Assembly (NCBI RefSeq): GCF_000143415.4
Contig: NW_003314339.1
Span: 737,751 to 801,750, forward strand
Length of the DNA stretch: 64,000 bases
From: Selaginella moellendorffii
Lineage: Eukaryota; Plantae; Lycopodiophyta
Direction of reading: 5' to 3'
The first letter of the stretch is position 1. The number at the start of each line of letters is the position of its first letter. Below are positions 135-34,532 of the stretch, piece by piece. A model generated the notes under the pieces. That model was not told the DNA's origin. It did no database searches and saw only the letters and a list, made by a program, of their open reading frames with translations. A program made the translations under genes and the position numbers.

Positions 135-158
135 AAGCTCTATTTCGTTAAAGTGGGA
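135..158 (+). repeat. Terminal inverted repeat (transposase-side end), copy 1
   Basis: AAGCTCTATTTCGTTAAAGTGGGA. Confidence 0.95.
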
Positions 159-794
159 TTTATTCAGTAAAATGGGACTAGGTACAAATTTTCAAGTATT
201 TGAAAATGACGTGAAATTATATGTTTTTTGTCCAGGGGCTAGACATATCTGGGGCATGGTGACTAGCGCGGTGACCTTATGTCCAGACTGAGTCCATCTA
301 GTTGTATAATAAATCTCATTGTCAAGGTGAACAAGCCGAATCTGAAGCTAAAGAAGAGCGATGGCATGCGCGCACACACTATTTGTTTGTTCATTGAGCG
401 TGTGGTGAGCTTTCCAAGATGAACATCATTCCTATTAGCCAGACATATAACTTAATGGTGAGAACATTTAGATATTATTCAATGTTATCTTTTTCTAACG
501 AATCTAATTGTGAAGGTGTAGCAAGAGGCATTGCTAGTCTGGAGAAGTCATTTAACTCATTTGACCCTTAGTGTATTTTCATGAAACTAAATAACATTCA
601 TATTATTAAGGAATTTCTCTAGTACCTTTTTTTTACGACATAGAGGCTTGCATTTCTTTCAAAGGTGATTTAGTAAAAGGCCTGAGGGCACATGCCATTC
701 TATTTCTCAGACCGGTATTAAGATATACTAGTGCAAAGGGAAAAAGGTATTTGGTGATCAAGTAAATGGCATGAGGGCACACGCCATTATAAGC

Positions 795-1154
795 CTAAGC
801 GCTAGTGGACACCTCCTTTTTGGTACTCTCAGCGGTACTATCATCCTTCTCCGGGTCAATTGTTTTGCTTTGGATTGTTGTCTCTGACGTTACTGGGGCG
901 TTCTCGATAGTTGTTAATGTTGCCGTTTGTTCAGAAAAATGATCACCTGGAGTATAGTACGGGGAGTTTGGAAGACTTATATATTCTACATCTTCACGTA
1001 TCTCCTTGTCCGTCTCCTTTTCTGCCTCACTTACAGATTTTGTGCTTGCCATGAGAACGCTCTTCACCCTAAAATATGGAGTTCGTTGTGTTATAAAAGG
1101 AAACCAACACACACGCTGCAAGGGAATGATGGTACATAAAGCACGTAAGCCCAC
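795..1154 (-). CDS. Small acidic/Thr-rich ORF or exon of unknown function downstream of the transposase
   Basis: ORF is open in all three copies (29990-30349, 62896-63255), with a TTTTAG acceptor-like site upstream of MASTKS. The copies are young, so conservation is weak evidence. Confidence 0.25.
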   Translation of the reverse strand: MGLRALCTIIPLQRVCWFPFITQRTPYFRVKSVLMASTKSVSEAEKETDKEIREDVEYISLPNSPYYTPGDHFSEQTATLTTIENAPVTSETTIQSKTIDPEKDDSTAESTKKEVSTSA

Positions 1155-1340
1155 AATATGGGTTTATGTGCCATTAATATGGGCCACACGCCATATTATT
1201 AGATTTATGCACGTGTGATTGGTAAATGCATATGTCACATCATCTTTGTTTTACCTCACACACTATATCAAGCCTCCTCTGATTCAGATTCGGATTGTTC
1301 ACCTTGAAATAAAATACATTAGAAACTTTGTAAAGGAATA

Positions 1341-4300
1341 TTAATGAATCTCACCTTGAACCCGAGTTATGAATGCTCTTGCTGCATCTCTTGCATGGTC
1401 TGGCAAGGTGATGGTGGCACTCTGCTTCCGCATCCAACCATGCACAACATTATCCACCGATATGCTCATGCTGGGATCCCTTGGATTCAGCACCCATCTC
1501 TTTTCTAGGCAATCCTTCGTATATCCGGAACTTGGCTTGAACCACTCCACAGTTACATTGAAGGAGTTAGTTTCCGCGTCCTCCTTTGCATCAGTGATGC
1601 AGCACCCCACCCATATCATTTGTTTTTTATTACTGGGTCTGACAAGCACGACCATTCCTTTGCAGACCTGTACTGGATTGAATGCTGAATCCGGCTTCTT
1701 GTTCCTCGGCCCACAATAGTGATCCTCAACATCGTTATCTGTCACTGCATTTCCAGAGGACATTGTTCCGCTACTATCTGGTGCTCTGGGTTCTGGCCAA
1801 AAGGACTCTTCCAATTCTTCATATACAACCGGCCCATTTTGGATAGCAGATATAATCTTCTCCCAGTATTCAAGCAAAGGCTTGCACCTCTTAAAATAGG
1901 ATTCTCCACCAAACACCAACCCCCTCTTCCAGAAGGCAATATGCTGTCTAATCCCGGCCACTATACTTTCCTGGTCTTTGAGTCCATCCGGGTGCATCGG
2001 CCGTGGGGAACCCTGAGGAATCATAGGTTCCCCAGTTATGGGATCTCTTTTGAAGAGTTCAATGCCGTCCACTGGCAGCCACACTGTGTCCCATTCTCTC
2101 ATCTTGTACCTCATCACTGGAGCACCGTCACACATGCTGAAATGAAACTGAAGAGGCTTGGAGTGGCCAATCAGCGTTTCGGATCCATCCCTGATGTAGC
2201 CTCTTACAAACCCCTTAAAGTCTGGAACCTCTGTCAGAAGTGCAGCTTCAACAGTGCCTTTGATGCAATTTTGGAATTCATCGTAGAGTTGTGGGAGGGT
2301 GAGGACATTGGATCGCCGGAGGGACTCTGCCAGGTGACTGAACATGGCATCGACGTCTTCATGAGTGTGCCCAACCATGAGAAAGCCAAGTGTAACCGTT
2401 TCAAATATGCCTTTGGCAACAAGCATCGCCAAGTACGCGAAGACGTACATGTTTTTGTTCTCACTGCCAGCATTGTCTGTTTGGAGCAGAAGATGGGGTG
2501 GAAGGCCACATCGGCCGCAAGAACTTCCTTGAGATTCTGCTTCGTTTGGATGAGGCTGTGCATTCACCGGGCGACCAGCCTCGTCGGAATGGCATGAGGC
2601 CTCACGTGATAACCCTACAATCTGACGGCCAACATATTCACTGGGATGGCATGGGGCCCCACGCGATACTGCAAGCCTTTGCTCCTCCTCCAGCTGAACC
2701 CTGTATGGGGTTCGATCGACAAGGGCCTTATGCAAGGGTTGGCCGTTCAGCTCAGTCTGCGCACTTTGCAGAGACCTTAAGTGTTTTGCTAGGGACGCAA
2801 TCATCATGTTTGCACCCCCGCCACCCCATAGAGGTACAAAGAAGTTCCCATAGTTCTGGGCACCATGCCCATGAGCGATTATGCCAAACAAAGACACAGG
2901 CAGCTGCATGGATGAAGAGATTGCCTTGGGGGCAGGATTGAGTCGAGGTAAGCACGTCTTTTTCTGGTCCATTTTGTCGTGGATGATGCAGAGGTAAGAG
3001 TCAGGTCTCTCCATGGAGAGAATCCTGTTATGATAATATGCAGTCCTGCAGCTTCTCTGCTCGATGTTGTGGTCGAGCCGCCTTCTAACCAACGTCTCTC
3101 GCTCTTGAGCGCTGCAAGAATTCTTCGACAAAGCCATTTTGATAGCAGTGCACTCGTCACACTTTGAAAAGCTGGAGTACTTTCCTATACTCACATCCCT
3201 GAACCTGTTGCTCCACAATCTACTAAATCTAGATTGGCTCAGCTTCCTGTAGCCATTACTCTGGAGTTCCCGATTCACATCTTCCAATATGGCCCCCTTG
3301 GTATACATGGAAGGGAGAACTCGTTGGGTGTCTCGTGTTCCATCTTCCAAGAGGCGGGTTTTATGTGGTTGCTGCTCGCTACATGTCTCGACAAACCTCT
3401 TGAAGATTGCCTCTCCATATACAACATGACCCCTGGTTTTGTGCGTACCGTCGTTCCCATGGACTGCCTGTTGAACCCTTTGTTCCTCGAACTCAGTTTT
3501 GATTCTGTAGAATGTGGTTCGAGGGACTCCATAAATGATTCTCCATGCCTTCATGCAGACCAAACCCCTCTGGAAGACCATGCCCCCCACCTGATGTTCT
3601 GAAGCATCAACAGATGACCGTAATGCCTCATACACAAAATTGCGAGCTGCCTTCCAGGACAATGTCTTGTATCTTGCTCTCTCCTCTTCAATAGCATCCC
3701 AATCAGCATGTTGACAGCACCTCCTCTTGCAACAAGCAACTGTCGAGACCATTCGAACCTCCATCGCCATTTTCTGCCTTTTCGGTTCGTTGCTCAGATC
3801 CCTTTGGCTGCGCTTTAGGAAGGTGTACTTTCTTTTCCCATGAAGAGATGTTCTGTCATCAGTTGTAGTGGTGTTTGATTGTGAATCCTTCACATTCTCA
3901 AACACTAAGTGCCTCAATTTCCACCGCACAATGCGTCCACTAGTCAGATTGTTTTCTTCTGTGTCAACAACCTCTAAAATCGCAACTCCAATATCATCCC
4001 AGCCCAATTCTTGATTAGCAACCGCATCTCTTGGATCGACAACTGTGGCTAAGCCCTCAGCTACCACCTCCCCCTCGGGGTTGTTTAGAAACACCTTTGC
4101 CTGAATCCATGTAGCACGGTTTTTAAGATCCACGGAGGGAACATGCGTCGCACTTGCGCTGTCCCCAACATCTGCTTTCTTCTGAAGATTTTTCAAGGCA
4201 ACAACAACATTTACCCCGATGACCATCTCTCCTTGTTCAATAGCGACCACATTCCCATCGAAGACAGTCTCTACTGATACAGCAGCATTGCCTTCCCCAA

Positions 4301-4409
4301 GCCTTTGACAGTGTATAACAAAGTTCCGATCCATAGACACAAGGGTCCCTTTTGCAACTCTCTTCCCACCATTCAAAATGTAAACCTTTTCCCCAACCCT
4401 GAAGGCCAT
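1341..4409 (-). CDS. Sola-like DDD transposase, 1022 aa (probably ends in a spliced last exon 1268-1302, GEQSESESEEA*)
   Basis: Motifs CCxxxCC, VCxxAWxxIYG, HGN, FSKCDEC, IIHDKMDQ, QTDNAGSENKN and FLMVGHTHEDVDAMFS, typical of Sola-type transposases. Lies inside a TIR element with 4-bp TSDs. GT-AG intron at 1303-1354. Confidence 0.85.
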   Translation of the reverse strand: MAFRVGEKVYILNGGKRVAKGTLVSMDRNFVIHCQRLGEGNAAVSVETVFDGNVVAIEQGEMVIGVNVVVALKNLQKKADVGDSASATHVPSVDLKNRATWIQAKVFLNNPEGEVVAEGLATVVDPRDAVANQELGWDDIGVAILEVVDTEENNLTSGRIVRWKLRHLVFENVKDSQSNTTTTDDRTSLHGKRKYTFLKRSQRDLSNEPKRQKMAMEVRMVSTVACCKRRCCQHADWDAIEEERARYKTLSWKAARNFVYEALRSSVDASEHQVGGMVFQRGLVCMKAWRIIYGVPRTTFYRIKTEFEEQRVQQAVHGNDGTHKTRGHVVYGEAIFKRFVETCSEQQPHKTRLLEDGTRDTQRVLPSMYTKGAILEDVNRELQSNGYRKLSQSRFSRLWSNRFRDVSIGKYSSFSKCDECTAIKMALSKNSCSAQERETLVRRRLDHNIEQRSCRTAYYHNRILSMERPDSYLCIIHDKMDQKKTCLPRLNPAPKAISSSMQLPVSLFGIIAHGHGAQNYGNFFVPLWGGGGANMMIASLAKHLRSLQSAQTELNGQPLHKALVDRTPYRVQLEEEQRLAVSRGAPCHPSEYVGRQIVGLSREASCHSDEAGRPVNAQPHPNEAESQGSSCGRCGLPPHLLLQTDNAGSENKNMYVFAYLAMLVAKGIFETVTLGFLMVGHTHEDVDAMFSHLAESLRRSNVLTLPQLYDEFQNCIKGTVEAALLTEVPDFKGFVRGYIRDGSETLIGHSKPLQFHFSMCDGAPVMRYKMREWDTVWLPVDGIELFKRDPITGEPMIPQGSPRPMHPDGLKDQESIVAGIRQHIAFWKRGLVFGGESYFKRCKPLLEYWEKIISAIQNGPVVYEELEESFWPEPRAPDSSGTMSSGNAVTDNDVEDHYCGPRNKKPDSAFNPVQVCKGMVVLVRPSNKKQMIWVGCCITDAKEDAETNSFNVTVEWFKPSSGYTKDCLEKRWVLNPRDPSMSISVDNVVHGWMRKQSATITLPDHARDAARAFITRVQGEIH

Positions 4410-4775
4410 TCTGAAAGTGTAGAAAAGAAGTTAAGACCATACAAAAAATAATTGGAGAATGGCCTAAATCATAACATACCAAACAACCTCAATAGCATGA
4501 GGCCACATGCCATTATTCAAACATGCTATTGACACCCACGTGAAATTTCGCATTCACAAAATTGGCATGAGGCCTCATGCCATCTTGATATACACACAGC
4601 TGCAGGCAAGTAAAAACATACATGACAATACGCTAGCCATGAAATTGCAAGGGCCCAAGATGGCATGTGGCCTCATGCCATTTCTAAATGTGGTCCTAAG
4701 CCATTCCATGGTGAACATACCAGGAAGCACAAGTGCCGAATATCAAGAGGAAGCGGTAGCCACACCAAAGACAGT

Positions 4776-4850
4776 GCCGCTCGCAACACCGCAACTACTC
4801 GTAGCGCCGCTCACAACACCGCAACTGCTCGTAGCGCCGCTCGCACAAAC
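4776..4850 (+). repeat. 30-bp tandem repeat (~2.5 units) upstream of the transposase
   Basis: GCCGCTCRCAACACCGCAACTRCTCGTAGC repeated; also present in copies 2 and 3. Confidence 0.8.
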
Positions 4851-5321
4851 TGCCACTCGCATAAACTGCCGCTCGCAATGGCGCTCGCAATGCCGCAACC
4901 GCTCGTAGACGCATAAACCACAGCCCACAACGCCGCTTACACAAGCAGCGCTCACTGCGCTCAGCGGAACCAAGAACACGGCGCACAAAAATGATAGACC
5001 TAGGAATGAGTTCGAGAATTCAAAAATAACACACGCTTGAACGTCACATCAAATCCTCTGACAAACCAGATCTTATGATTCCTCTGACAAATTTCAAACT
5101 GAGTAGCTTCTAGACTTTGCTGTCGGAGGTTGAACTTTGTCACATCATGTCCTTGCCTCGATCCAGCTGTGCCATGTCAGTGATTCGAACTTTGCCATGC
5201 CATGTCAGCGATCCGCGCCAAGATTATTCGCCGTGTAAAGGAATAATTACGCTGTGTGTGTACGTCCATTTATGGCAATATAAGGCCACACGCCATTCAA
5301 AGAATAATGCTAGTCGAGCAT

Positions 5322-6590
5322 TTTTTGGTGCATTTTTGGGTTCAAAATTGCATGAGCCCACACGCTATAAAGTTTACCTGTACCAAAAATAGAAACAGCT
5401 TTATTTACTTGGGAATTTAAGTGGTTGAGGCATTTTTAAACTTACAAACACATGCCCTACTTACATTCCTTTGGTTGCCTAAAATTCAAAAATATTATAA
5501 ACCTTTCTTTTTGCATTTTCAATGTTTTCAATTATGGTTTTTGATTTTCGTAGGACCAGCCTAGTAATCTATTTGCATCCCGTCATGTTTATAGCTAGCT
5601 TTCGTTTGTCCCCTTCGCTAGCCTGAGATACATCTGCTCGGCATCTGCCTCTTACAGCATTTGCCCAGAAAGGGCATCTTTCTTCACGCAGCATTTGCCA
5701 CATGTTTAGGGTTTAGGGTTTAGGGTTTAGCAATTCAGTAGCTTGATAAACATGCAAATACAAAACTTGATGCAAAATCCTTTGATATGTCACAATGCCC
5801 CTAGGACCATAAACACATTTCAATAGAGAGGGTCCTTTCATTTCATAACTCCTTACGTAGATCTTGGTGAAACCAGAGTTAGTGAAGTTAGTTTCTTGTG
5901 ATCCCGCATCTGATTGTGATGTCCCTTTGCAGTTTCGATGGAAAGGTCAATGCACACCAAACTGTAAAATCTTGGAGCAAAATAACGGTCGGATCTATGG
6001 CAAATGCCCCTGAAACATTGTAAGGCTCGTGTGGTCTCATGTGGTGTCCGATCGAGATGCTTCTTTGCAGGGTCATCAAGAAAGACATTGTATACCATTC
6101 TGTAAAATCTAGTTGGATCTCCAGAAAACTCAAAAAAATCTCGCGCGTGTCAGAATATCCTAGGAATATACTCCTATGTGCCCCTGAAAATGGCATGCGG
6201 CCCCACGCCATTCAAGAGATAATGCCAGATGACGCCGAGAATTTTTTGGTGCATTTTTTGGGTTCAAAATTGCATGAGCCCACACGCTATAAAGTTTATC
6301 TTTGCCAAATAGAGAAAAGTTTATCTGTGTCATGTGAAGTAGTTACAGTCCTTTGTGCTCGGCATCTGCCTCTTGCAGCATTTGCACTGAAAGGGAATTT
6401 TTCTCCATTCAGCATTTGGCCCTGAAAATGGCATGCGCCCACACGCCATTCAAGGAATAACGCCACAGGACGCCTGGATTTTTGGGTTTAAAATGTTTAG
6501 GGTTTTTTGGGTTTTTTCAAAATATTTTGGGTCCAACGTTTTTTGGGTTTCTTTGGTTCAAAATTGCATGAGCCCACACGCTATAATATT
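5322..6590 (+). repeat. Three dispersed ~50-bp direct repeats in the divergent intergenic region
   Basis: TTGGGTTCAAAATTGCATGAGCCCACACGCTATAA-like block at ~5335, ~6258 and ~6553. Confidence 0.8.
5705..5730 (+). repeat. Plant telomere-type (TTTAGGG)n tract / telo-box cluster
   Basis: TTTAGGG x3 plus TTTAG; one unit longer in copy 3 (~56726-56759) and one unit mutated in copy 2 (~32923-32948). Confidence 0.85.
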
Positions 6591-7299
6591 GATTTGAGAG
6601 AAAAATAGAAACAGATAGAATTTCTTTATTTAGCTGAACATCTGCCATTTTTGGAAATACAAGATGCTTTGGAATATCCAATCATGCATGGTATAAATAT
6701 AGCGAGGGTATTAAATGATATCCCAATCATGATCTTTCTTTTGGATTTCGCGTGCATGCAGTCCGAGGAATGATGACGTTGCGGATTTCTTTTGGATTTT
6801 GCGTGCTTGCATGCGCGCGGCAATCCAGAAATTAATGGTGGCGCCCAAGTTCGAGGAATGATGACGTGGCGGGATTACCAACCGTTGTGACATTTCGCGC
6901 GTGTGAGGTTAGGTTTTGCATTTTGCTTCGTACTCGCGCTCGCGCTCGCATCACACTCGCGCTCCCGCTCGCATCGCGCTCCCACTCGCGATCACGCTCA
7001 CTTCTCTACAGGTTTCTCGTGTGCATCGGCGTCCACTCGTGCTTGCATCACACTCGCGCTCGCATCGCGCTCGTGTGCATCGGCGTCCACTTCAAGACAC
7101 ACCCAGTTTGTAACTTCGCCGCCAACTCCGCCGCCCACTCCACCACCCACACGCAGCCCACTTGGCGTCCCGGGAGATTTCAACACCACTCTCCAACTGT
7201 AAGTGGCAGAGTAGCCTTGCTGCTACGATCCGCTGCACACACAGTGCACATTCGCCAGCGAGTCCGGCCTCGATTGTCACGGCCTCCATTCGGCTTCAA

Positions 7300-10200
7300 A
7301 TGGTAAGTCTTTTAGACCAAGTAGAAAATGGCATGAGGCCACATGCCATTCAGTAGCAACATTGGCATGCACCGATTGGGCTCTCGAGTGCAGTCCGGTT
7401 ACAGATGGCGTGTAGCCTCACGCCATCTTAGGATGCAGCCTCAAGACATCTGATGCAGTGGTGAATGGCGTGTGGCCTCACGTTATTTCCAGCTGCTAGC
7501 TTTTCATCTGTCAGCTCTAATTGTTGTGCATTTTTGAACAGGCGAGGAATTGCGTTCTTCTTCCAGCCACTGTCAATGTGGATGCAGAGAAGGGGGAGGA
7601 GCTCACCAGTTGGACTTTCGGGATGGAAGGCGAGGATCTGATGCTGTACAACACAGATGGTGGGAGAAAAGAATGCATGGGGATCCTCATCCAAGTGACA
7701 GACACTCCATGCAGTTCCATGCAAGAATATGGACTGGCACTTGTGGTAGAGACAGCGTCCGCCTTCAAGATCCACCTTGCACATCCTAGCGGCTTCCCGG
7801 AGGGGGGCAGCAGCTATGAGGAATTCCTAGAGGGAGCTAGGGAGAGGTTGTCCAGGAGGCCCACAATTTCAAAGACGCTGCGGGTCTATGAAGATCACAT
7901 GGAATCCACGGACCTCACCTGCGGCGATGTTCAAAAACTATATTCCAACATTGAGCCGTTGAGAGTGCCTCCAGTTTGCGAAGCGAAGGGGAAGGGGGTC
8001 GATCTGGAAACTACCCCGAAGCAGAAAAGGGTGGTCAAGCTCAAGCCGACGTCCGACTCTGCTGCTCCAAAAAAGAAGCTACTCGGTGATGCCATTGCCT
8101 CGGGTTCGAACACTACACCCACCAAAAAGAAGAGCCGCAAAGAGCAGAAAGAGCAAGAAGAGGCAGCAAAAATCGTCGCAGATAATAGTACTTGTTACTA
8201 TTCCAACAAAGTATATACAATCGACGTGAGCCGTATCGAGATCCAAAGCAAATACAACCACAGGCTAGTATCTGATGAGTGGGTGGAGAAACTGAAGCAG
8301 AAGATGCTGGCAAGTCCAGTAACACCCGACATCGCAGACGTGATCCCCTACTACCAAACAATGAAGGGCGAGACGAGGTTTCCAGACTTGATCAATAGGA
8401 AGGTGTTGGACGATCAGAACATCCGGTTCTATGCCGTCTCCAGGCAGCATTCTAGCTTGGCGATGCAACAGATAGTTGTGGATATTATGGTGGGCGAGGA
8501 GGTGAAGAAAGTCTTCAAGACAAGAGTTGTCCACCTGATAAAAGGCAACTCGCCCCTCCGATCTATCATATACATCTCCCACGCGCAGAATGTCAAGCAA
8601 GAAACGTGCTACAAATCGGGTCTGCACGAGACATTGGCATGAACACGGAAGCTCTGGGTTCAACTGAAGAAGCCACAAAAACCAGGACAAGGACGTGCAC
8701 TAGCAACTAGCGCCTGGCAGGTAAGCCTCGTTGCATGTGGCATAGCATGTGGCCTCACGCCATTTCCATTGCAGGAATTCTCGAGTCTTCTCTCGAAAAC
8801 ACTGGGGGTCAATGACACACTCAGCATCCATAACATTCTACTCGCGACAAAAGTTGTTTTTGACAAATGGGTAGATGTGCTAAGGAGGTACCATGACGGG
8901 GAGTTGCTAAACTCAATGGGTGTGGAGGACGGCCGGAAGCCCAATGATTTGAAGCTCAACGCCTTGCGTTTCTCGCGGTCTCTAGACGACGACGACCTTT
9001 TGACAGTGGCTAATACTCTTCTACGTAGTGAAGTAGTCTTCAACAAGACCAAAATGACTCCCGGCCATATTGTGACATACGAGGACTTGTGCACGACTTT
9101 GAGAGCTCGTGCGCTATTGAAGGATTGGATCTTCGAGCAAGTGGCCGTGGCGAGGGTGAGCATCGACACCACGCAAGAGATGATGGAAGAGCTGGACTTG
9201 TCAAATGAAGACATCGACGAGTACGTGAAGGGGGCCCCCAAGTTCATCGATCTGCTGCGGGATGCCACGAAAAGTAAAGCTGAGAAGTTGGATCAGTATC
9301 CAAATTTCATTAAGAGGGATGTCGACCGCCGGCTTCAGAAACAGCTCGACCCCGCAGCAGAGGCCTATCGAGAACCTTACCGGGTATACGTGAATTCGGA
9401 TGAGGATCAAAGGTGGAGGAGCATCGTTTCCCGCGGAGATGAGCAGGTCAAGAACATCTTTTGTGTGATGGACTTCACAAACGAGGAGATCACTCATGTA
9501 GACGAAGTCAGCTCCATCATTGACTTAATGGTGGGACTTGCGGAGGTGGAATCTTCAGTCCACTATATGATCTACGACTCCGAATCCTATCACAAGTTTT
9601 GGAAGGCCTTGAACGAGGTGAAGGATCGGTTGAAAGGCAAGGAGATGCGGGAGATCCATGGGATAATGGCTAAGAAGAAGATACCGACGAATGTCCGCAT
9701 CTTCACAGTCGCCCTTGTTATTGGTCCTGCAGCAGAGTGGGACTGGAGTGACTTCCCAGCTTCGTTCAACAAAGCCGATCGAATTGATCTGAGGGAGGTC
9801 AATTTACCCGTGCCTGAGGAACTGAAGACGGCTATGGAGCTTTCGAATCCAAGGAAAGCTCCAGGTGCAGCATGGGAAATGCTCAGCTGGGTCTTCAACG
9901 CAATAGCGGGTGACTCCAAGGGCAAATGCGTTGTCGAGTACAACTGCGGCGGACTATTCTTTCGAGCCGCACTACTCAAGGGTGTCCCGTGTGTTGCGGT
10001 GACAAACTCCATTGAAGAGGTGACTTCAATGGAGCATATAATTACAGTTGCCAAAGAAAAACAGTATCTTCTCTACGAACCTGGTGAGTACGCACTTTAA
10101 GTTTAAATGTTATCTCACAAGCTCTGTATGCAGGTGCGTGGCCACCCCCAGATGCTGAAACGGCGTTAACAGCTACTGATGTTAGGCCGAGGTCACAACC

Positions 10201-12908
10201 TGCACAAGGTAAGGTCACGTGAGGCCTCACGCCATTTTGATTATAGATCGTTGTGAATATTCAGACACGAGGACTGAAAAGCGCACTGGTGGCGCGTCGA
10301 AGAAGGACAAACAGACAAGCAATAGGAAAAAAGGAGGTACAAATTATATTTGCAATGGCGTGTGGTCTCATGCCATTCCTTGCAGGAGACACTTCTTCAA
10401 AGGCAAAACAGGCAAGCACCAGCCAAGCTCAAACTGACAGTGGTCATAAAAAGCGAAAGCACGTTGGACAGTCGTCGGGATCAGAGGCGTTTGATTCGAA
10501 AAGGAAGAAGGGCAACGAAAAGATGATAGGTAATGCCTCGCGGTTATGGCGTGTGTGCTCATGCCATTCATTGCAGATCAAGGGCTGAGTGAAAGGAGCC
10601 AGTCACCACCTTCTTACTCAGATTCCTATGGCGGACTCCCCTTCCCCAATCTCAATGGAGAGGTACAATGGATGAGGGATGCTTTTCAAGTCAGGGCCAC
10701 GTTTTTCTCATCTCGTCGTCTTCGAAGGGTGCAAGAACGTGCAGAAACCATGTTAAGACAGTCGGGTGAGGATACGGTCCTAGGTCACGCACTAAAACAG
10801 GCTATGGATGTCTTGTATTTTGAGATGGAGACTCGGCTAGATGATTTTTCCAAGATGGTCCTGGAAAAACAAGCCATCCAGCCTGAGCAGCCTATGGAAG
10901 AAATGCAAGAGGGGGATGAGGAGCCAGAGAAAGATAATGAGCAGGAAGAGCAGAAGGACGAAGAGGAGGACAAAGAAGAGGAGGACGAAGAAGAGGAGGA
11001 CGAAGAAGAGGAGGACGAAGAGGACTTGGATGGTCCTCACAATGGTGACGATCACAATAACGACGATGACGATGATGACGATGATGGCCAGCCTGAGGTG
11101 GCCAAAGAGCAGCGGAGGAAGGTCATACAAGACAAACCATCAGGTAAATAATAGTACATCCATTCCTAACCTTTTACCATTTCTAACATTGTCCATGTAG
11201 GTCGCAGAAGAAATGGTAAGTAGAGATTATTCAGTTGAATTAAGATACAAACTCTAGCCTTTAGTGTCGAGGAAGGATAGTGCCAAGCAAGGGTCGAAAC
11301 GTATGTCCAATCCTTCAGAATCAGCAGTGCGCCCAAGTGATATCGGTCCTAGTTCCTCAATAGCAGTTGATGGTAAATACAGTATAGTCGATTCAATGTG
11401 CTAATGAGTTTGTTTTTAGTAGCCAGTAGGGAGGATACCATCTCAATTGAAGGGAGATATTTGGACATGCATATGGATCCGCCAGTGGACTCTACTTGCC
11501 TGCAAGAGTCATCAGAGCTGGTGGAGGCTACTATCCATATCAACGCCAAGCAAGCTGACCACGCTCCACTTGATGCTACCCATACCACTGAGTCAATCTT
11601 GTCCACATATCCAACTGACGGTGACCAGGCGCCATTGGACCCGCATGAGGCCGCCCCAGCCGCCGAGCCGGTCGTATCCTCATTTCCAACGTGTGCCCAA
11701 TCGTCTGACTACGCGCCGTTGGAACCTCCCTACACCGCCCCTGCTGCCTGTTCGGTCATGTCCACTTTGCCAACGGAGGCACCAGCTGAAATGGCGTGTG
11801 ATCACACGCCATCGGAACCACCCCATGCCACTGTTGAGCCAGTTGTACCAGAGTCTACAGCTGAAATGGCATGTGCCCACACGCCATCGGATGCGATTGA
11901 CCCCACATTGCAGAGGAGAGTATTTCCGCCCTTCACGTTTCCTCGACAAAAACCCTCTGAACGACCATCGGGAGCACCATTCGCTAATATTGTAGATGGT
12001 AAAATTGACTTGTACCATTTTTTATGCTAACGCATTTCATTTCAGAGTCACGGCGAAAGTACTGTATCGTTTTTGATCTGAACGGTGTCCTTTTCTCCCA
12101 TGAGCGTGGCTCGTCCTCAAATGTCACTGCACCTTCCAAAGCCTGCGGTCGCAAGTTGGTCAAAAGAGACAGATTCACATTAATCACACGGGAGAAACTG
12201 CGGGATCTAATAATGACCATGCGACACTTAAAACAGAGGGCCGGGTTCAATTTGCAATTGGGAGTTTGGACATCCATGATGCGCCACAATGCATTAACGT
12301 TGCTACAGATGATGCACGATCAGACGCGAGTAATATTACCATTTGACTTTCTCCTAACGCAGGAGGATTGCTTGACTATGGTCCATGTGAGGGGTAGCAA
12401 GCCCATCTTCGTCAAGGCAGAGGCTGTAGTGATGAACCGGACTGCTAGGTCAAGTGAAATCCTCATCATCGATGACTCGCCGATTAAAACTGCAGCGAAC
12501 ACGCACACATATGCAGTGCACCCCATCTCTTGCAGTATGGAAACTAGGGAGAAGAAACCGTATGTTCTGGGGGACCTTGCAAAATGGCTTGAAGCGATGG
12601 TGATAGAGAACCGGCCAGTCCAGGAGGTGGCTGCAGAAATCAACCAAATGGCAGATGGAACGGTATATCAAAAGCCATTTGATCGGACAGACACCAGTCA
12701 TCATTTATGGCATGTATATTGTCTAGCCAAGCACTATCCGCATCTCCATAATCTGCTCAACCGGATGGGTTCTTCGACCACTGAACATGAGCGTGGACGT
12801 ATTAGAGAAGAGATGGCATTACTATTGGGTTTAAATCCTGATAGTGTGGAGAGTGATGAAATTCCAAGATTATTGTATAGGCGTTGGAGGCAAAAAATAA
12901 CAGTCTGA
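7300..12908 (+). pseudogene. 11-exon cargo gene (~1637 aa): ParB/DGQHR-like + degenerate amino-MTase-like + acidic linker + FCP1/NIF-like HAD phosphatase; one premature stop at 8640-8642
   Basis: Exons 7300-7302, 7542-8720, 8775-10083, 10134-10208, 10265-10336, 10386-10529, 10577-11143, 11201-11215, 11265-11372, 11420-11998 and 12046-12908 join in frame through GT-AG introns. The TGA at 8640 is CGA in copies 2 and 3. The first exon is the least certain. Confidence 0.82.
12046..12908 (+). CDS. Terminal exon encoding an FCP1/NIF (NLI-interacting factor)-like HAD phosphatase domain
   Basis: CIVFDLNGVL (motif I), GVWTS (motif II), KPIFVK (motif III), ILIIDDSPIKTAAN (motif IV). Confidence 0.85.
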
Positions 12909-13315
12909 GATGGCATGTATTTATTTAAAAATGTAACTTATTATGGCATGGGGTTCCATGCCATTGTATTAATATTAAAAGACAATTCTTTGAGAGGATT
13001 TGCATTATACTAGAAGTGTTACAGCATGTTATTGGAAGTCTACGAAGTTGTTTTATTAATAAGGGGAAAGTAAAGATTGAATGGGGACTTGGGCTCCACC
13101 TAGACTCGGAGCAACTGAGCCAATATTAAAAGGATGGAAAGAAATTGGACGACGATGACAAGGAGAAGAGAGAGGTGAAGCAGTGAGAAGTGATTGAGTA
13201 GACATTTCCTTGTTTAAAATAAAATGGCATGTGCCTCAATGCAGTTGAATTTTGTTATATTTATATACTATATAAAGGTTTGGAAACCTTATTTTACAAG
13301 TGGGATAATGACAAT

Positions 13316-13339
13316 TCCCACTTTAACGAAATAGAGCTT
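13316..13339 (-). repeat. Terminal inverted repeat (cargo-side end), copy 1
   Basis: TCCCACTTTAACGAAATAGAGCTT. Confidence 0.95.
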
Positions 13340-20448: not shown

Positions 20449-20480
<32 letters not shown>

Positions 20481-27933: not shown

Positions 27934-29329
27934 ATGGCAAGGGCAGGGCGTAAGCGAACCCAGGCGGAGACGGAACCTCCGCCAGAGCTAGAGCCTCCGG
28001 TTGAACAAGAGGCTATGGATGAGGAATCCTTGCACGAGGAGGACTCCAGTGAGGAAACTTCCAAACAGGAGTCCGGTGGCGAGGTTCGGTCATCCAAGGC
28101 TTGATTGGACGTGCTAGAAGGACAGTTGGCACAGACCAATGCCCTGCTGGAGACTCTCGTACGCAAGTTAAAGCGTGACGAGAAGCGAAAGAAAAAGCGA
28201 AAGACTGCGGATGCTGGCAGCGCAGAAGGTGCGGACCCTTCGGCAGGGACTGAGGCAAAACCAGACAAGGTCGAACAGACCGAAGTGGAATCAGTCCCTC
28301 AGGCAGTTCCCAAGTACAAACCAAAGCCCCCACCGGTGTTCAAGGGAGTGAACGACTATAAGGTTGTGGAGGATTGGTTTTACGATATGGAGAACTACTT
28401 CCAAGCGTTGCGGTTACCGAGCTTGGAGAAGGTCCTATGTGCAAAACCATACTTGGCAGATAATGCCAAGTCTTGGTGGAGAACAACGGAGGCCAACGAA
28501 GGACCGGTGGCCACCTGGGACATGATGAAGGCGAGAATCCGCGCAACATACGTTCCTCCGAATGCCACTCTGCATCTGAGAGATGAGCTGAGTAGGCTGA
28601 AGCAAACTGGAACCATCCAGGAATATGTGCATGGGTTCATGGCAAAGAGGATACTTGTCACGGACATGGGGGATATGGATGCGTTCCATGCCTTTATATC
28701 AGGTTTGCAAACCTGGGCTCGCGGTGAGGTGATGCGCTGGAACCCGACCAACTACAAGGAAGCGTTGGATGCGGCCATCAAGGTGCATTTCAACGATAAC
28801 CTGCGAAAGGGGAACACGACGGGGTCGGGATCCACGTTTAGCAAAGGGGCCAAACCAAGGGGAACGTATAGCAAGGGGAAATTCAAGAAGAGTTTTTCTA
28901 AGAATGAGTCCTCGGGGTTCCGGAAAGGCAAATCCAGTGGCCAGCGAGCGAGTACGTGGGGGAGTCAAGCGAAAAAAGACAAACCCACGGATAAGAAGGT
29001 CAAGTTGTATAGCAGCGTGGGAAACAACGTATGCTACAACTGCGGCGAAGCGGGACACTTCTCGAGGGAATGTCCCTACCCGAAGAAGGCCAGAGCCAAT
29101 ATGGGCATCAAGTCGGGTGAAGTCCAAACTGAGGTATGTGATCCAGTCCCTAACTCAAAGTTACTCATTACACGAGCAACTTTGGTAGAGAGTCGTTCGC
29201 GACATCTACTAGCCCTCCGAGGGAAGCTCGGAGGTAGCTTTGTTAATATCCTTATTGACACGGGTGCTTCGGATAATTTTGTGGCTGCAGACATAGTCCA
29301 GCAAGCCGAACTAACGGTGCAGCGGCTAG
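27934..29329 (+). pseudogene. gag: Gag (capsid + CCHC zinc knuckle) and N-terminal half of aspartic protease
   Basis: CYNCGEAGHFSREC, LKQTGTIQEY, ILIDTGASDNFV; CGA>TGA stop at 28102; cut by the TIR at 29330. Confidence 0.92.
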
Positions 29330-30994
29330 AAGCTCTATTTCGTTAAAGTGGGATTTATTCAGTAAAATGGGACTAGGTACAAATTTTCAAGTATTTGAAA
29401 ATGACGTGAAATTATATGTTTTTTGTCCAGGGGCTAGACATATCTGGGGCATGGTGACTAGCGCGGTGACTTTATGTCCAGACTGTGTCCATCTGGTTGT
29501 ATAATAAATCTCATTGTCAAGGTGAACAAGCCGAATCTAAAGCTAAAGAAGAGCGATGGCATGCGCGCACACACTATTTGTTTGTTCATTGAGCGTGTGG
29601 TGAGCTTTCCAAGATGAATGTCATTCCTATTAGCCAGACATATAACTTAATGGTGAGAACATTTAGATATTATTCAATGTTATCTTTTTCTAACGAATCT
29701 AATTGTGAAGGTGTAGCAAGAGGCATTGCTAGTCTGGAGAAGTCATTTAACTCATTTGACCCTTAGTGTATTTTCATTAAACTAAATAACATTCATATTA
29801 TTAAGGAATTTCTCTAGTACCTTTTTTTTACGACATAGAGGCTTGCATTTCTTTCAAAGGTGATTTAGTAAAAGGCCTGAGGGCACATGCCATTCTATTT
29901 CTCAGACCGGTATTAAGATATACTAGTGCAAAGGGAAAAAGGTATTTGGTGATCAAGTAAATGGCATGAGGGCACACGCCATTATAAGCCTAAGCGCTAG
30001 TGGACACCTCCTTTTTGGTACTCTCAGCGGTACTATCATCCTTCTCCGGGTCAGTTGTTTTGCTTTGGATTGTTGTCTCTGACGTTACTGGGGCGTTCTC
30101 GATAGTTGTTAATGTTGCCGTTTGTTCAGAAAAATGATCACCTGGAGTATAGTACGGGGAGTTTGGAAGACTTATATATTCTACATCTTCACGTATCTCC
30201 TTGTCCGTCTCCTTTTCTGCCTCACTTACAGATTTTGTGCTTGCCATGAGAATGCTCTTCACCCTAAAATATGGAGTTCGTTGTGTTATAAAAGGAAACC
30301 AACACACACGCTGCAAGGGAATGATGGTACATAAAGCACGTAAGCCCACAATATGGGTTTATGTGCCATTAATATGGGCCACACGCCATATTATTAGATT
30401 TATGCACGTGTGATTGGTAAATGCATATGTCACATCATCTTTGTTTTACCTCACACACTATATCAGGCCTAATGAACCATATCACATGTGCGCACATGCT
30501 ATATATATGGAGAAGTATTATGCAAGGATAGAAAAATTCAATGCATGATTGTGGAGAGCAATGGCATGAAGCCACATGCTAAATAACATTTTAGAGAAAG
30601 AATTAAAATAAAAACATGCAAACAGTACTAAGTGGACCAAGACTTAGAAGTGCACAATTGAATGAGGTATTTCTAATAAATATTTCACTCACCTCATATA
30701 GGAATGGCTACCACTCTCAAATGGCGTATTGCCTCATGCCATCACCTCGCAATTTGTTATAACAATCCGATGAATTCATATTCAGCTTGTTCACCTTAAA
30801 CTTTAAGTAAGATTTGCTAGAACAACTAAGAATTTATACTTGTTATTTGTATCATCTCACCTAGGAATGGCGTAAGGCCACATGCCATCACGCCTCCTCT
30901 GATTCAGATTCGGATTGTTCACCTTGAAATAAAATACATTAGAAACTTAGTAAAGGAATATTCATGAATCTCACCTTGAACCCGGGTTATGAAT

Positions 30995-31446
30995 TGTAAG
31001 CGACTATATTTTCCATTCTACTTTAGTCACTTAACCACACCTCTGACCACTTGGAGGAGTCTCATTCACAACCTCCATAAGTCCAATCCAGGACTTGGGA
31101 CTTGCTAGCCCCGAGAATGGCATCCATGCCACTCAACATTTGCACTTGGTCCAAGTGCTCCACGTGTCCGATCCCATGACCGACACTCAAAGGTACCACC
31201 GACATAGCAGCCCGTTACGCTAAGGCTATGCCCAATCACCTTTGCCACACTGGTAGTCCAATACCACTTGCATCACCGACATAGCAGCCCGTTACGCTAA
31301 GGCTATGCCCAATCACCTTTGCCACACTGGTAGTCCAATACCACTTGCATCACCGACATAGCAGCCCGTTACGCTAAGGCTATGCCCAATCACCTTTGCC
31401 ACACTGGTAGTCCAATACCACTTGCATCACCGTCTTGGCTCTCCAA
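30995..31446 (-). mobile_element. Truncated family B LTR with a 77-bp triplication, replacing most of the transposase
   Basis: Starts TGTAAGCGACT; repeat units begin at 31199, 31276 and 31353; joins the transposase 5' remnant (31444-31628) through CAA microhomology. Confidence 0.88.
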
Positions 31447-34400: not shown

Positions 34401-34532
34401 GTCTCGGGAGATTTCAGCGCCACTCTCCAACTATAAGTGGCAAAGTAGCCTTGCTGCTACGATCCACTGCACACACAGTGCACATTCGCCAGCGAGTCCG
34501 GCCTTGATTGTCACGCCTCCATTCGGCTTCAA

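What the first reader, a model, noticed from the sequence alone, without database searches (positions are those of the whole stretch)
135..13339. 13-kb two-gene Sola-like transposon: transposase + multidomain cargo + its own dispersed palindromic sites
Seen: a TIR/4-bp-TSD element in three copies with a divergent gene pair and more than 20 copies of one fixed-geometry palindrome. Known: Sola elements are DDD transposons with 4-bp TSDs, usually described with only a transposase. Some plant TEs (VANDAL/VANC, Spm TnpA) encode a second protein that binds motifs scattered through their own sequence to counter silencing. Inference: this is a self-regulating or anti-silencing transposon system built from ParB-like, MTase-like and CTD-phosphatase-like parts, a combination I do not recognise from described families.
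Basis: partly seen in the sequence, partly recalled or inferred. Interest (0 to 1): 0.92.

Follow-up and report, generated by a model that had tools for sequence, protein, structure and literature searches.

The report
Two-gene DNA transposon with private palindromes
This is a real 13-kb cut-and-paste transposon carrying a transposase, a large mostly unrecognisable second gene and about 25 copies of its own 24-bp palindrome; related transposons carry different palindromes of their own, which suggests a private protein-DNA recognition code belonging to the transposon family rather than to the extra gene.

Summary
The element (135-13339) has perfect 24-bp terminal inverted repeats. Two further copies are in the window. 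Their 4-bp target duplications (CTAG, TAGT) are each confirmed by an uninterrupted paralogous site. The gene pair is divergent.

- **Transposase:** an intact 1022-aa ORF matching Pfam DUF7869, with invariant D/D/D-type motifs.
- **Second gene:** 9 coding exons and 8 short introns give one 1610-codon frame with a single CGA>TGA stop.
- **Palindrome:** AATGGCRTG-NGGCCN-CAYGCCATT occurs 25 times in the element, and 36 core matches in the window against 0.2 expected. It is essentially absent outside the copies and avoids coding sequence (P=9e-6).

The NIF/CTD-phosphatase-like domain is real but atypical (DxN). "ParB-like" and "MTase-like" got no support from Pfam, NCBIfam, PDB, an exhaustive 1.8-billion-protein search or a custom MTase HMM. 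"Sola-like" fits (TIR, 4-bp TSD, three acidic motifs), but no reference sequences were available to test it.

New finding: at least seven relatives with 27-36% identical transposases carry their own 18-24-bp palindrome arrays upstream of the transposase, and no cargo homologue was detected beside any relative. The palindromes are therefore more likely a clade trait, bound by the transposase, than cargo sites. All three copies are decaying. This is a new variant of a known kind.

The parts
135..158 (+). Left terminal inverted repeat (24 bp). Contains the inner motif AAAGTGGGA (150-158), repeated as AAAATGGGA at 169-177.
   Evidence: exact reverse complement of 13316-13339.
13316..13339 (-). Right terminal inverted repeat (24 bp). 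With AAGTGGGA at 13298-13305 it forms an inverted pair of the inner motif.
1341..4409 (-). Transposase CDS, 1022 aa, intact in copy A. Motifs: CC-x3-CCQ, an HTH-like segment, IIHDKMDQKKT, LQTDN-x4-NKN, GHTHEDVD.
   Evidence: ORF. (Pfam DUF7869, E=6e-42). (invariant D478/D481, D645, E684/D685/D687 across 6 homologues).
4411..4479 (-). Putative 5'-UTR intron of the transposase gene (GTATGT...TTTCAG), ending 1 nt before the ATG. Inferred only.
   Evidence: An acceptor in the same position is seen in relative L002.
4410..7622 (.). Intergenic and leader region between the divergent genes. It holds 12 palindrome sites, (CCCTAAA)3 at about 5705-5731, a 125-bp internal duplication (5284-5404 and 6199-6324), and two ACGT-box repeats (6763-6790 and 6850-6876).
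7623..12908 (+). Second gene (cargo) CDS. 9 coding exons give 1610 codons. Introns: 8721-8774, 10084-10133, 10209-10246, 10337-10385, 10530-10576, 11144-11264, 11373-11419, 11999-12045.
   Evidence: All introns are GT..AG. Splicing gives one frame of 4833 nt with a single in-frame stop.
8640..8642 (+). Premature TGA in the cargo of copy A. Copies B and C have CGA here.
12046..12908 (+). Last cargo exon, encoding a NIF/FCP1-type HAD phosphatase-like domain. Motif I is FDLNGV (D-x-N, not D-x-D) and motif IV is IIDDSP.
   Evidence: PF03031, E=4.7e-6, above the gathering score. (cellular homologue P0021 shares the FDxNGVLF, WTxMMRHNA, LLTQEDCL and DDSP motifs).
676..699 (.). Palindrome site, downstream of the transposase stop.
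765..788 (.). Palindrome site.
2645..2668 (.). Palindrome site inside the variable linker of the transposase CDS. A weaker site lies at 2588-2611.
   Evidence: the linker is unalignable among homologues.
4491..4514 (.). Palindrome site, transposase leader.
4561..4584 (.). Palindrome site (perfect core).
4659..4682 (.). Palindrome site (perfect core).
6189..6212 (.). Palindrome site. Variant sites (TGCATG...CACGCT) lie at 5346-5369, 6268-6291 and 6562-6585.
6427..6450 (.). Palindrome site.
7327..7350 (.). Palindrome site in the cargo leader, inside a GT..AG segment (7303-7353).
7404..7427 (.). Palindrome site in the cargo leader. A weaker site lies at 7464-7487.
8741..8764 (.). Palindrome site in cargo intron 1, ending 10 nt before the 3' splice site.
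10213..10236 (.). Degenerate palindrome site in cargo intron 3.
10354..10377 (.). Palindrome site in cargo intron 4.
10545..10568 (.). Palindrome site in cargo intron 5.
11790..11813 (.). Palindrome site inside the Pro-rich repeat of the cargo exon, translated as AEMACDHTPS.
11865..11888 (.). Palindrome site inside the Pro-rich repeat of the cargo exon.
12942..12965 (.). Palindrome site just after the cargo stop codon. Weaker sites lie at 13223-13246 and 360-383.
29330..42327 (+). Copy B. TSD is CTAG. Most of the transposase is deleted (about A-coordinates 1276-3982 and 4159-4400). A solo LTR is inserted at 37258-39053 with TSD GTGAC. The cargo has 6 stops and frameshifts.
49141..63915 (-). 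Copy C. TSD is TAGT. A solo LTR is inserted at 57184-58765 with TSD CTTAT. The transposase has W>stop at A-coordinate 1865. The cargo has stops at A-coordinates 8586 and 12621 and one splice-acceptor change.
29195..29215 (.). Uninterrupted paralogous target (empty site) for the A/C insertion: ACTA at 29208-29211. The reciprocal empty site for copy B is CTAG at 13-16.

Best explanation
**What it is.** The feature is an autonomous-type cut-and-paste DNA transposon with 24-bp TIRs and 4-bp TSDs. Its transposase belongs to Pfam DUF7869 and has three conserved acidic motifs. It is best described as Sola-like. It sits as three decaying copies nested in Ty3/gypsy retrotransposons of a methylating, probably plant-lineage, genome.

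**The palindromes.** The roughly 25 copies of the 24-bp palindrome are double-stranded DNA recognition sites for a dimeric protein encoded by the element. The most likely binder is the transposase itself, through its N-terminal Cys-rich/HTH region. The sites fill every tolerated non-coding niche: subterminal regions, both leaders, the shared intergenic region, short introns and two disordered coding linkers.

Their probable job is to concentrate that protein on the element's own copies, for transpososome assembly, for activating its own transcription, or for countering silencing. Known parallels are Spm TnpA sites, VANDAL VANC motifs and Mutator transposase sites.

**The second gene.** It encodes a lineage-specific 1610-aa accessory protein. 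This protein is nuclear-type, largely disordered or orphan, and ends in an atypical NIF/FCP1-type phosphatase domain. It was under selection in the active lineage. It is not what defines the palindrome system.

**Shown.** The anatomy, copy structure, gene models, motif statistics, the occurrence of such palindromes in several related lineages, and the NIF domain.

**Inferred.** Who binds the palindromes, and what that binding or the cargo does.
For: **Transposon identity.**
- TIRs, TSDs and empty sites.
- DUF7869 at E=6e-42, and invariant HDKMDQ, DN-x4-NKN and GHTHEDxD motifs in 6 homologues.

**Palindromes are specific to the element and non-random.**
- 36 matches against 0.2 expected, all inside the copies.
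- 25 sites in copy A, one weak site elsewhere and none in the LTR inserts.

**They behave as DNA sites rather than pairing elements.**
- The centre GGCC is conserved.
- The flanking AAT/ATT extends the dyad to 24 bp.
- The R/Y positions of the two arms vary independently: A-T 5, G-C 2, A.C 6, G.T 2.
- Sites avoid coding sequence: 4 of 25 against 60% expected, P=9e-6. Within non-coding DNA they are not significantly concentrated in introns (P=0.1).
- They vary less among copies than other non-coding DNA: 4/504 against 98/4698, P=0.04.

**Recurs in several related lineages.** Arrays of different 18-24-bp palindromes sit just upstream of the transposase gene in several relatives.
- L002: CCTATGGCC-N4-GGCCATAGG
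- L006: ATTTGGCCATATGGCCAAAT
- L003, L007, L008, L009, L010: GGCTCAAAC...GTTTGAGCC
- L018: GTTTACGGACGCGCGTCCGTAAAC
- L021: CACGGGT-N4-ACCCGTG
- L035: TACGAACG-NN-CGTTCGTA

Six of 84 loci had at least 3 exact recurrences, against 0 of 84 shuffled controls. Three palindrome types coexist in one assembly, JAEIGA01, which argues for recognition private to each element rather than by the host.

**Cargo absent from relatives.** No homologue was found in 85 related loci. The shared repeat unit in the moss-like contigs is only 5.2-5.7 kb.

**Cargo is a real gene.** Nine exons splice into one 4833-nt frame with a single stop, which is CGA in the other copies.

**Precedents.** VANC (PMC5735166). TnpA and transposases as sequence-specific regulators (bioRxiv 10.64898/2026.08.24.746577).
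Against: **Binding untested.**
- No binding data exist.
- The TIR inner motif (AARTGGGA) only loosely resembles the palindrome half-site (AAATGGCRTG), so the TIR-binding specificity of the transposase may not be the one that reads the palindromes.

**Limits of the comparison with relatives.**
- Contigs of the closest relatives are only 4-6 kb, so a neighbouring second gene cannot be excluded for them.
- Most distant relatives in long contigs show no recurrent palindrome. The trait is recurrent but not universal.

**Cargo function.** Cargo copies show dN/dS of 0.63-0.73, not distinguishable from neutral, and all three cargo copies are broken. Current function is therefore unproven.

**Other gaps.**
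- The lower variability of the palindromes is only marginally significant and is partly an ascertainment effect.
- Sola membership rests on architecture only.
Confidence: 0.45

Rival explanations
1. The cargo protein binds the dispersed palindromes, in a ParB/parS-like or VANC-like manner. It then modifies chromatin or polymerase through its MTase-like and phosphatase-like parts to keep its own copies active.
For: - Cargo and palindromes co-occur in this element.
- Palindromes are densest around and inside the cargo gene: 7327-7487, and introns 1, 3, 4 and 5.
- The cargo has basic, NLS-like stretches and a genuine NIF domain.
- The precedent is VANC (PMC5735166).
Against: - Palindrome arrays occur in relatives where no cargo homologue is detectable.
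- No ParB, MTase or other DNA-binding domain could be detected by any method used.
- The cargo has no similarity to the transposase DNA-binding region.
Confidence: 0.15
2. The palindromes are binding sites for a host factor, such as a dimeric transcription factor or a chromatin or insulator protein. The element has accumulated them as promoter or enhancer modules or to shape local chromatin.
For: - Arrays lie upstream of the transposase start in all lineages where they are seen, and in the shared intergenic region here. Both are promoter-like positions.
- ACGT-box repeats nearby show that the region has promoter character.
Against: - The sequences differ completely between lineages, even within a single assembly or a single metagenome sample (L021 against L035). 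This is unexpected for one conserved host factor.
- Sites also lie at the 3' ends of both genes and in introns.
- There is essentially none in the other 21 kb of the window.
Confidence: 0.15
3. The palindromes act as RNA or single-strand hairpins. Possible roles are intron-definition or branch-site modules, introner-like mobile mini-introns, or small-RNA or terminator structures.
For: - Four of eight cargo CDS introns (38-54 nt) and three GT..AG segments in the leader carry the palindrome 3-10 nt before the 3' splice site.
- The right arm contains a CTCAY sequence that could serve as a branch site.
- Two introns share GTAA(T)GCCTCG at their 5' ends.
Against: - There is no covariation between the arms, and the conserved GGCC lies where a loop would be.
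- Most sites are not in introns, and two are translated.
- Enrichment in introns relative to other non-coding DNA is not significant (P=0.1).
- Mismatches are not biased towards G.U on the transcribed strand (read from the list).
- No Rfam family matches.
- No TSD-like repeats flank the introns.
Confidence: 0.07
4. The cargo is a passenger. It would be a captured or chimeric host-derived gene carried along as in Pack-type elements, with no role in the element's life cycle. The palindromes in its introns would then reflect only long residence in the element.
For: - The cargo is absent from all detectable relatives.
- dN/dS between copies is near neutral.
- A cellular family with the same DxN-type NIF domain exists (P0021).
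Against: - A 4.8-kb, nine-exon frame with only one stop in copy A and two in copy C implies purifying selection in the lineage that produced these copies.
- Residues 1-339 found no genuine homologue in an exhaustive search of 1.84 billion proteins. The 443-aa piece found none in a word-based search. This is unlike a recently captured conserved host gene.
- It has its own leader and promoter-like region.
Confidence: 0.2

Closest known systems
Sola superfamily of eukaryotic DNA transposons (Sola1/2/3). Description as summarised in PMC10741241.
   Same: TIRs, 4-bp TSDs, and a transposase with three conserved acidic motifs (DDD type). Described sizes run from 2-9 kb up to more than 15 kb. Reported in non-seed plants such as moss. 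Relatives of this transposase are abundant in contigs I take (from recollection of the sample series, not checked) to be peat-moss and bog metagenomes.
   Different: Sola elements are described with a transposase only. This element has a 1610-aa second gene and a private palindrome repeated about 25 times. Sequence homology to reference Sola transposases could not be tested here. The only library match is Pfam DUF7869.
VANDAL21 and VANC anti-silencing system of Arabidopsis (PMC5735166, PMC10398659)
   Same: A protein encoded by the element works on short motifs accumulated in the non-coding and intronic DNA of its own family. The motifs differ between related lineages.
   Different: VANDAL belongs to a different superfamily (Mutator-like). 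Here the motifs are 24-bp dyads rather than VANC's short motifs. No protein resembling VANC is present. Binding and hypomethylation are untested here.
En/Spm (CACTA) TnpA and its subterminal 12-bp motifs (bioRxiv 10.64898/2026.08.24.746577)
   Same: Multiple copies of a motif recognised by an element protein, arranged in subterminal and promoter regions. There is a second element-encoded product besides the catalytic transposase. That preprint proposes sequence-specific transcriptional regulation as an intrinsic property of transposases.
   Different: The transposase family is different (not CMC). There are no CACTA termini and the TSD is 4 bp rather than 3 bp. The sites are spread over the whole 13 kb, including introns. 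The cargo is unrelated to TnpA and to the transposase.
Bacterial ParB/parS systems and ParB-MTase fusions
   Same: Only the idea of a palindromic site repeated on the replicon that encodes its binder.
   Different: No ParB or MTase similarity was detectable by any profile method.
FCP1/SCP (NIF) CTD-phosphatase family of the HAD superfamily
   Same: The last cargo exon matches Pfam NIF above the gathering score. It has HAD motif I, motif II (WTS) and motif IV (DDSP) in the right order.
   Different: Motif I is D-x-N rather than D-x-D. From general knowledge of HAD enzymes, this suggests altered or lost phosphatase chemistry. The domain is fused to about 1300 residues of orphan sequence inside a transposon.

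Membership tests
Class II TIR (cut-and-paste) DNA transposon | Terminal inverted repeats at both ends | tested here: met
   24-bp perfect TIR in all three copies.
Class II TIR (cut-and-paste) DNA transposon | Target-site duplication with a matching empty site | tested here: met
   CTAG for copy B and TAGT for copy C, each with an uninterrupted paralogous site (13-16 and 29208-29211). Copy A lacks a TSD.
Sola superfamily | 4-bp TSD | tested here: met
Sola superfamily | DDD catalytic triad in an RNase-H-like transposase | tested here: inconclusive
   Three invariant acidic motifs (D478/D481, D645, E684/D685/D687) in 6 homologues. The fold was not modelled, and which residues are catalytic was not established.
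Sola superfamily | Sequence or profile homology to reference Sola1/2/3 transposases | not testable with these tools
   No Repbase or Dfam library or Sola reference sequences were available. The only hit is Pfam DUF7869.
ParB/Srx-fold domain | Profile match to a ParB/Srx N-terminal domain | tested here: not met
   No Pfam or NCBIfam hit at E<=10. PDB phmmer found nothing relevant. The exhaustive search found nothing genuine. The AlphaFold model was unusable.
SAM-dependent DNA methyltransferase (beta class, PF01555-like) | Motif IV (DPPY) and motif I (FxGxG) in a profile-detectable domain | tested here: not met
   No Pfam hit. A custom HMM of 7 MTases with filters off gave no hit at E<=1000. hhalign probability was 0.13%. 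There is only a loose resemblance to motif I.
NIF/FCP1-like HAD phosphatase | Pfam PF03031 match above the gathering score | tested here: met
   26.8 bits against a cut-off of 21.8, E=4.7e-6.
NIF/FCP1-like HAD phosphatase | Catalytic DxDx(T/V) motif I | tested here: not met
   The sequence reads FDLNGV, with Asn at the second acidic position. The same is true of the cellular homologue P0021.
VANC/TnpA-type sequence-specific self-regulation | An element-encoded protein binds the dispersed motif and changes methylation or transcription | not testable with these tools
   Only the cis side (lineage-specific motif arrays) could be shown.
Introner-like elements | A mobile unit with its own ends or TSD that creates introns | tested here: not met
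   No TSD-like repeats were seen. Only the 24-bp dyad is shared between sites (information content is below about 0.5 bit per position beyond it). Most sites are not intronic.

The most novel reading that the evidence does not exclude
Several lineages within a clade of plant-lineage DUF7869 (Sola-like) transposons run a private cis-code. Each lineage would have its own 18-24-bp palindrome that co-diversifies with the DNA-binding part of its transposase or another element protein, marking "self" copies for activation or protection from silencing. In this lineage the code has colonised even the 40-50-nt introns of an orphan 1610-aa accessory gene. The only recognisable module of that gene is an atypical FCP1/NIF-type phosphatase domain. 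This raises the possibility of a transposon-encoded modulator of RNA-polymerase CTD or silencing-pathway phosphorylation that is recruited to its own copies.
Probability: 0.15. Interest if true: 0.8.

Novelty: new variant of a known kind. Interest (0 to 1): 0.55.

Why it matters
Transposons that carry their own sequence-specific "self-recognition" system are known in only a few well-studied plant families (Spm TnpA, VANDAL VANC, Mutator).

This case suggests the same logic in a poorly studied superfamily, with three features of interest:
- **Large dyad sites.** The recognition sites are unusually large perfect palindromes.
- **Rapid turnover.** The sites differ completely between lineages, even within one genome.
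- **An unexplained accessory gene.** One lineage has added a huge orphan gene ending in a CTD-phosphatase-like domain.

This gives a tractable system of motif swaps between lineages for studying how transposon-private DNA recognition evolves. It also gives a candidate for a new kind of transposon-encoded host-manipulating protein. If the palindromes are merely subterminal transposase sites, the element is an ordinary, well-annotated new family.

Tried and rejected
**Cargo homology and structure.**
- Pfam, NCBIfam and PDB sequence searches of the two large N-terminal cargo exons gave only noise.
- The word-based homologue search of the 443-aa exon found nothing.
- The exhaustive phmmer search of residues 1-339 gave only a yeast repeat protein, whose score is inflated by repeats, and a 95-aa fragment.
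- AlphaFold2 single-sequence models of both exons had pLDDT of 32-35, so no fold search was run.
- I built a custom beta-class MTase HMM from YhdJ and six plasmid methylases to test the "motif IV then motif I" idea. It found no hit, and hhalign gave a probability of 0.13%.
- Cargo against transposase showed no similarity, so the cargo is not a TnpA-like offshoot of the transposase.

**Relatives.**
- tblastn of the cargo against 85 related loci found no hit, even at E<=5.
- I tried to define TIRs and TSDs of the moss-like relatives from pairwise copy boundaries. The boundaries were too eroded (82-89% identity) and I abandoned this.

**Host and RNA.**
- Host identification failed. The exact-protein look-up found nothing on record. 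Literature searches for the accession numbers returned nothing.
- Plant-lineage affinity is inferred only from TTTAGGG-type repeats, a C>T and CpG decay spectrum, ACGT-box repeats, and relatives in what I recall to be moss and bog metagenomes.
- Rfam and tRNA scans were empty.

**Literature.** Full-text searches for DUF7869, and for Sola together with palindromes, found nothing relevant.

**Rejected reading.** I considered that the window's 12-nt minisatellites belong to the element. They lie in the LTR-type repeat.

Full report

A self-BLAST of the first 13.7 kb against the window, together with direct reading of the ends, shows one element family in three copies.
- Copy A spans 135-13339 on the + strand.
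- Copy B spans 29330-42327 on the + strand.
- Copy C spans 49141-63915 on the - strand.

All three end in the same perfect 24-bp inverted repeat, AAGCTCTATTTCGTTAAAGTGGGA.

Copy B is flanked by CTAG on both sides and copy C by TAGT on both sides. Both insertions lie in the gag-protease region of paralogous Ty3/gypsy elements. The window therefore supplies the empty sites itself. CTAG is uninterrupted at 13-16, in the gypsy copy to the left of A. ACTA (= TAGT) is uninterrupted at 29208-29211, in the gypsy copy to the left of B. The 4-bp TSD is well supported.

Copy A is the exception. Its left flank is the same gypsy site as copy C (50-134 matches the reverse complement of 63916-64000). Its right TIR abuts the interior of a solo-LTR-type repeat, with no TSD. 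A and C are therefore probably one insertion followed by an inverted duplication or rearrangement whose breakpoint lies exactly at the transposon end.

B and C each carry a later solo-LTR insertion with TG..CA ends and 5-bp TSDs of GTGAC and CTTAT. B has also lost most of the transposase. A deletion derivative of the B type, 97-98% identical, exists in an independent public read set (L001).

**2. The genes**

The - strand carries an uninterrupted 1022-aa ORF (4409 to 1341) that matches Pfam DUF7869 at E=6e-42. The word-based search found only six homologues. Two are near-identical (97-98%). The others are 27-36% identical.

Aligned, the six homologues share several invariant motifs:
- CC-x3-CCQ
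- an HTH-like "G(I/V)xxxTFYR" segment
- C-I-I-H-D-K-M-D-Q-K-K-T
- L-Q-x-D-N-x4-N-K-N
- M-V-G-H-T-H-E-D-x-D-A

This is the three-acidic-motif layout expected of a DDD/E RNase-H-type transposase.

On the + strand the apparent string of ORFs resolves into one gene. The ATG is at 7623 and there are eight GT..AG introns of 38-121 nt. The nine exons splice into a single 4833-nt frame of 1610 codons ending at 12908. The only interruption in copy A is a TGA at 8640, which is CGA in B and C.

Copy C has two other nonsense changes and a splice-acceptor change. B has six nonsense changes plus frameshifts. The transposase of C has one nonsense change.

Substitutions between copies are dominated by C>T, with CpG sites about 2-4.5 times more mutable. 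That is the signature of a methylated, silenced repeat. dN/dS between copies is 0.63 for A against C and 0.73 for A against B. This is what neutral post-insertion decay gives, so it says nothing about the active ancestor. The near-intact 4.8-kb frame does show that the ancestor's gene was under selection.

**3. What is the second gene?**

Only the last exon is recognisable. It is a NIF/FCP1-type HAD domain (PF03031, 26.8 bits against a cut-off of 21.8).
- Motif I reads FDLNGV, which is D-x-N rather than D-x-D.
- Motif IV reads IIDDSP.

One weak cellular homologue has the same motif set (P0021, 31% identity, in a compact eukaryotic contig). A cellular D-x-N branch of the family therefore exists.

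The rest of the protein comprises an N-terminal 120 residues, basic NLS-like stretches, about 600 residues of mixed alpha/beta sequence, an acidic tract and a Pro-rich repeat. All of it is orphan. The evidence is as follows.
- No Pfam, NCBIfam or PDB match, even at E<=10.
- No hit for the 443-aa exon in the 5.8-billion-cluster search.
- No genuine hit for residues 1-339 in an exhaustive phmmer scan of 1.84 billion representatives. The top hit is a yeast tandem-repeat protein.

I could see what probably prompted "ParB-like" (an FYAVSRQHSSLA segment) and "MTase-like" (VVEYNCGG...CVAVTNS, about 167 residues after VMDFTN). I therefore built an HMM from E. coli YhdJ and six plasmid beta-class methylases. 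With all filters off it finds nothing in the cargo, and hhalign gives 0.13% probability. AlphaFold models without an alignment were unusable, with pLDDT of 32-35. Those two labels are therefore not supported.

**4. The palindrome**

The core GGCATG-N6-CATGCC with up to 1 mismatch occurs 36 times in the window against 0.20 expected. Every hit lies inside a copy. With R/Y degeneracy there are 25 sites in copy A (16 strong), one weak site in the remaining roughly 21 kb, and none in the LTR inserts.

The logo is AAT-GGC-R-TG-N-GGCC-N-CA-Y-GCC-ATT, a 24-bp dyad whose centre GGCC is itself conserved.

Three properties point to a double-stranded site for a dimeric protein rather than a hairpin.
- The would-be loop is conserved.
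- The R and Y positions of the two arms vary independently: A-T 5, G-C 2, A.C 6, G.T 2. These are simply CpG/TpG alternatives.
- Mismatches show no bias towards G.U on the transcribed strand.

Sites avoid coding sequence: 4 of 25 against 60% expected, P=9e-6. The four coding sites lie in an unalignable transposase linker and in the Pro-rich cargo repeat.

Four of the eight cargo introns consist of little more than splice sites plus the palindrome, which ends 8-10 nt before the acceptor. Three GT..AG segments in the leader look the same. Relative to other non-coding DNA, however, introns are not significantly enriched (P=0.1). The simplest reading is that the sites occupy every niche that tolerates them, at about 4 per kb of non-coding DNA.

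Palindrome positions differ less among the three copies than other non-coding positions do: 4/504 against 98/4698, P=0.04. This is a weak result and partly an ascertainment effect.

**5. Relatives change the interpretation**

Contigs encoding the 27-36% identical transposases carry their own palindromes in arrays within about 1.5 kb upstream of the transposase start, and sometimes downstream too.

| Locus | Palindrome | Copies seen |
|---|---|---|
| L002 (and L012) | CCTATGGCC-N4-GGCCATAGG | about 15 in 1.6 kb of L002 (1 in L012) |
| L006 | ATTTGGCCATATGGCCAAAT | at least 5 |
| L003, L007, L008, L009, L010 | GGCTCAAAC...GTTTGAGCC | 1 to 4 per locus |
| L004 | AACTCGAAC-N5-GTTCGAGTT | 2 |
| L018 | GTTTACGGACGCGCGTCCGTAAAC | 8 |
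| L021 | CACGGGT-N4-ACCCGTG | 10, on both sides of the gene |
| L035 | TACGAACG-NN-CGTTCGTA | 9 |

Under a strict criterion (exact 7-nt arms), 6 of 84 loci have at least 3 recurrences, against 0 of 84 shuffled controls. Three different palindrome types coexist in one assembly, JAEIGA01. Two coexist in one bog metagenome. That is hard to reconcile with a single host factor.

Many older and more distant copies in long moss-like contigs show no such arrays, so the trait is recurrent rather than universal.

The cargo has no detectable homologue in any of the 85 loci, including those with 10-kb flanks. The shared repeat unit of the moss-like family is only 5.2-5.7 kb, which leaves room for one gene. 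The caveat is that the closest relatives sit on contigs of 4-6 kb.

**6. Most likely mechanism**

The palindrome arrays recur with the transposase in several lineages where no cargo homologue was detected, whereas the cargo is seen only here. The palindromes are therefore best explained as recognition sites for an element protein common to the clade, most probably the transposase acting as a dimer. They would serve in transpososome assembly at the subterminal regions, in sequence-specific self-activation, or in anti-silencing.

The documented parallels are Spm TnpA sites, VANC motifs in VANDAL non-coding DNA (PMC5735166) and Mutator transposase sites (bioRxiv 10.64898/2026.08.24.746577).

The TIR inner motif AARTGGGA shares AA-TGG with the palindrome half-site. 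It occurs at 150-158 and 169-177, and as an inverted pair at 13298-13305 and 13316-13323. This is a hint and no more.

The cargo is a lineage-specific accessory gene. Its phosphatase-like module invites speculation about polymerase-CTD or silencing-pathway targets, but nothing here tests that.

I put this composite explanation at about 0.45. The rivals are cargo binding (0.15), a host factor (0.15), an RNA or introner role (0.07), and the cargo as a functionless passenger (0.2, which is compatible with the palindrome part of the main model).

**7. Comparison and novelty**

In architecture the element fits the Sola superfamily: TIR, 4-bp TSD, DDD-type transposase, sizes up to more than 15 kb, and presence in moss (PMC10741241). 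Homology to reference Sola transposases could not be tested.

In function it most resembles the VANDAL/VANC and Spm/TnpA systems, but it belongs to neither family.

I found no description of DUF7869, or of palindrome arrays in Sola-type elements, in the searchable literature.

I rate it a new variant of a known kind. The anatomy is solid. The comparative observation of lineage-specific palindromes is new and testable. The more exotic domain story (ParB and MTase) does not hold.

The host is unidentified. Several features suggest a methylating, plant-lineage genome:
- TTTAGGG-type heptamer repeats
- the C>T and CpG decay spectrum
- ACGT-box repeats
- introns of about 50 nt
- relatives in contigs that I recall, without having checked, to be peat-moss and bog metagenomes

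Noticed in passing
window 13340-25000; also 30995-31444, 37258-39053, 57184-58765: A repeat of about 1.6-1.8 kb with TG..CA ends and 5-bp TSDs, so a solo LTR. It carries long 11-12-nt minisatellites of the GGACTCCATCTCG type. It is present as a cluster of copies at 13.3-25 kb and as later insertions in element copies B and C.
   Followed up: partly
window 131-135 and 13339-13345, compared with 63916-64000: Copy A has intact TIRs but no TSD. It shares its left flank with the inverted copy C, while its right end abuts the interior of an LTR. A breakpoint exactly at the transposon end suggests an adjacent deletion, alternative transposition, or recombination between copies.
   Followed up: partly
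L003 5300-5315, L006 5170-5185, L008 4429-4444, L011 2128-2143, L012 3620-3635, L013 4029-4044: A second palindrome, GGTGTTTAT(A/T)AACACC, lies roughly 110-380 nt downstream of the transposase gene in six relatives. It is conserved across lineages whose upstream palindromes differ. It is not found in that position in the window element.
   Followed up: partly
window about 5705-5731; L058 2650-3750 and 20300-20340: Plant-type telomere-like heptamers, (CCCTAAA)n, lie inside the element's intergenic region, with copy-number variation between copies. Degenerate arrays of the same repeat occur in a relative's contig.
   Followed up: no
window 6763-6790 and 6850-6876: Two copies of GAGGAATGATGACGT(T/G)GCGG, an ACGT-core motif that looks like a bZIP site, lie about 750-850 bp upstream of the cargo ATG. 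They are followed by a CG-rich leader and look like a promoter.
   Followed up: no
copies A, B and C, whole length: Differences between copies are dominated by C>T, with CpG sites 2-4.5 times more mutable. Most gene-breaking changes are CAG>TAG, CGA>TGA or TGG>TAG. This fits methylation-driven decay of silenced copies.
   Followed up: yes
L087 2146-2793 (protein P0021): A 215-aa cellular protein in a very gene-dense eukaryotic contig shares the unusual D-x-N NIF motif set with the cargo's last exon. This points to an uncharacterised cellular branch of the FCP1/NIF family.
   Followed up: partly
window 4159-4400, compared with copy B 31619/31620 and L001 position 204: The same 242-bp deletion, which removes transposase codons 4-84, is present in copy B and in an independent read-set contig. 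A B-type deletion derivative has therefore itself been copied.
   Followed up: partly
window 8721-8774 and 10530-10576: Two palindrome-bearing cargo introns also share GTAA(T)GCCTCG at their 5' ends. This hints that these introns may be paralogous to each other.
   Followed up: no
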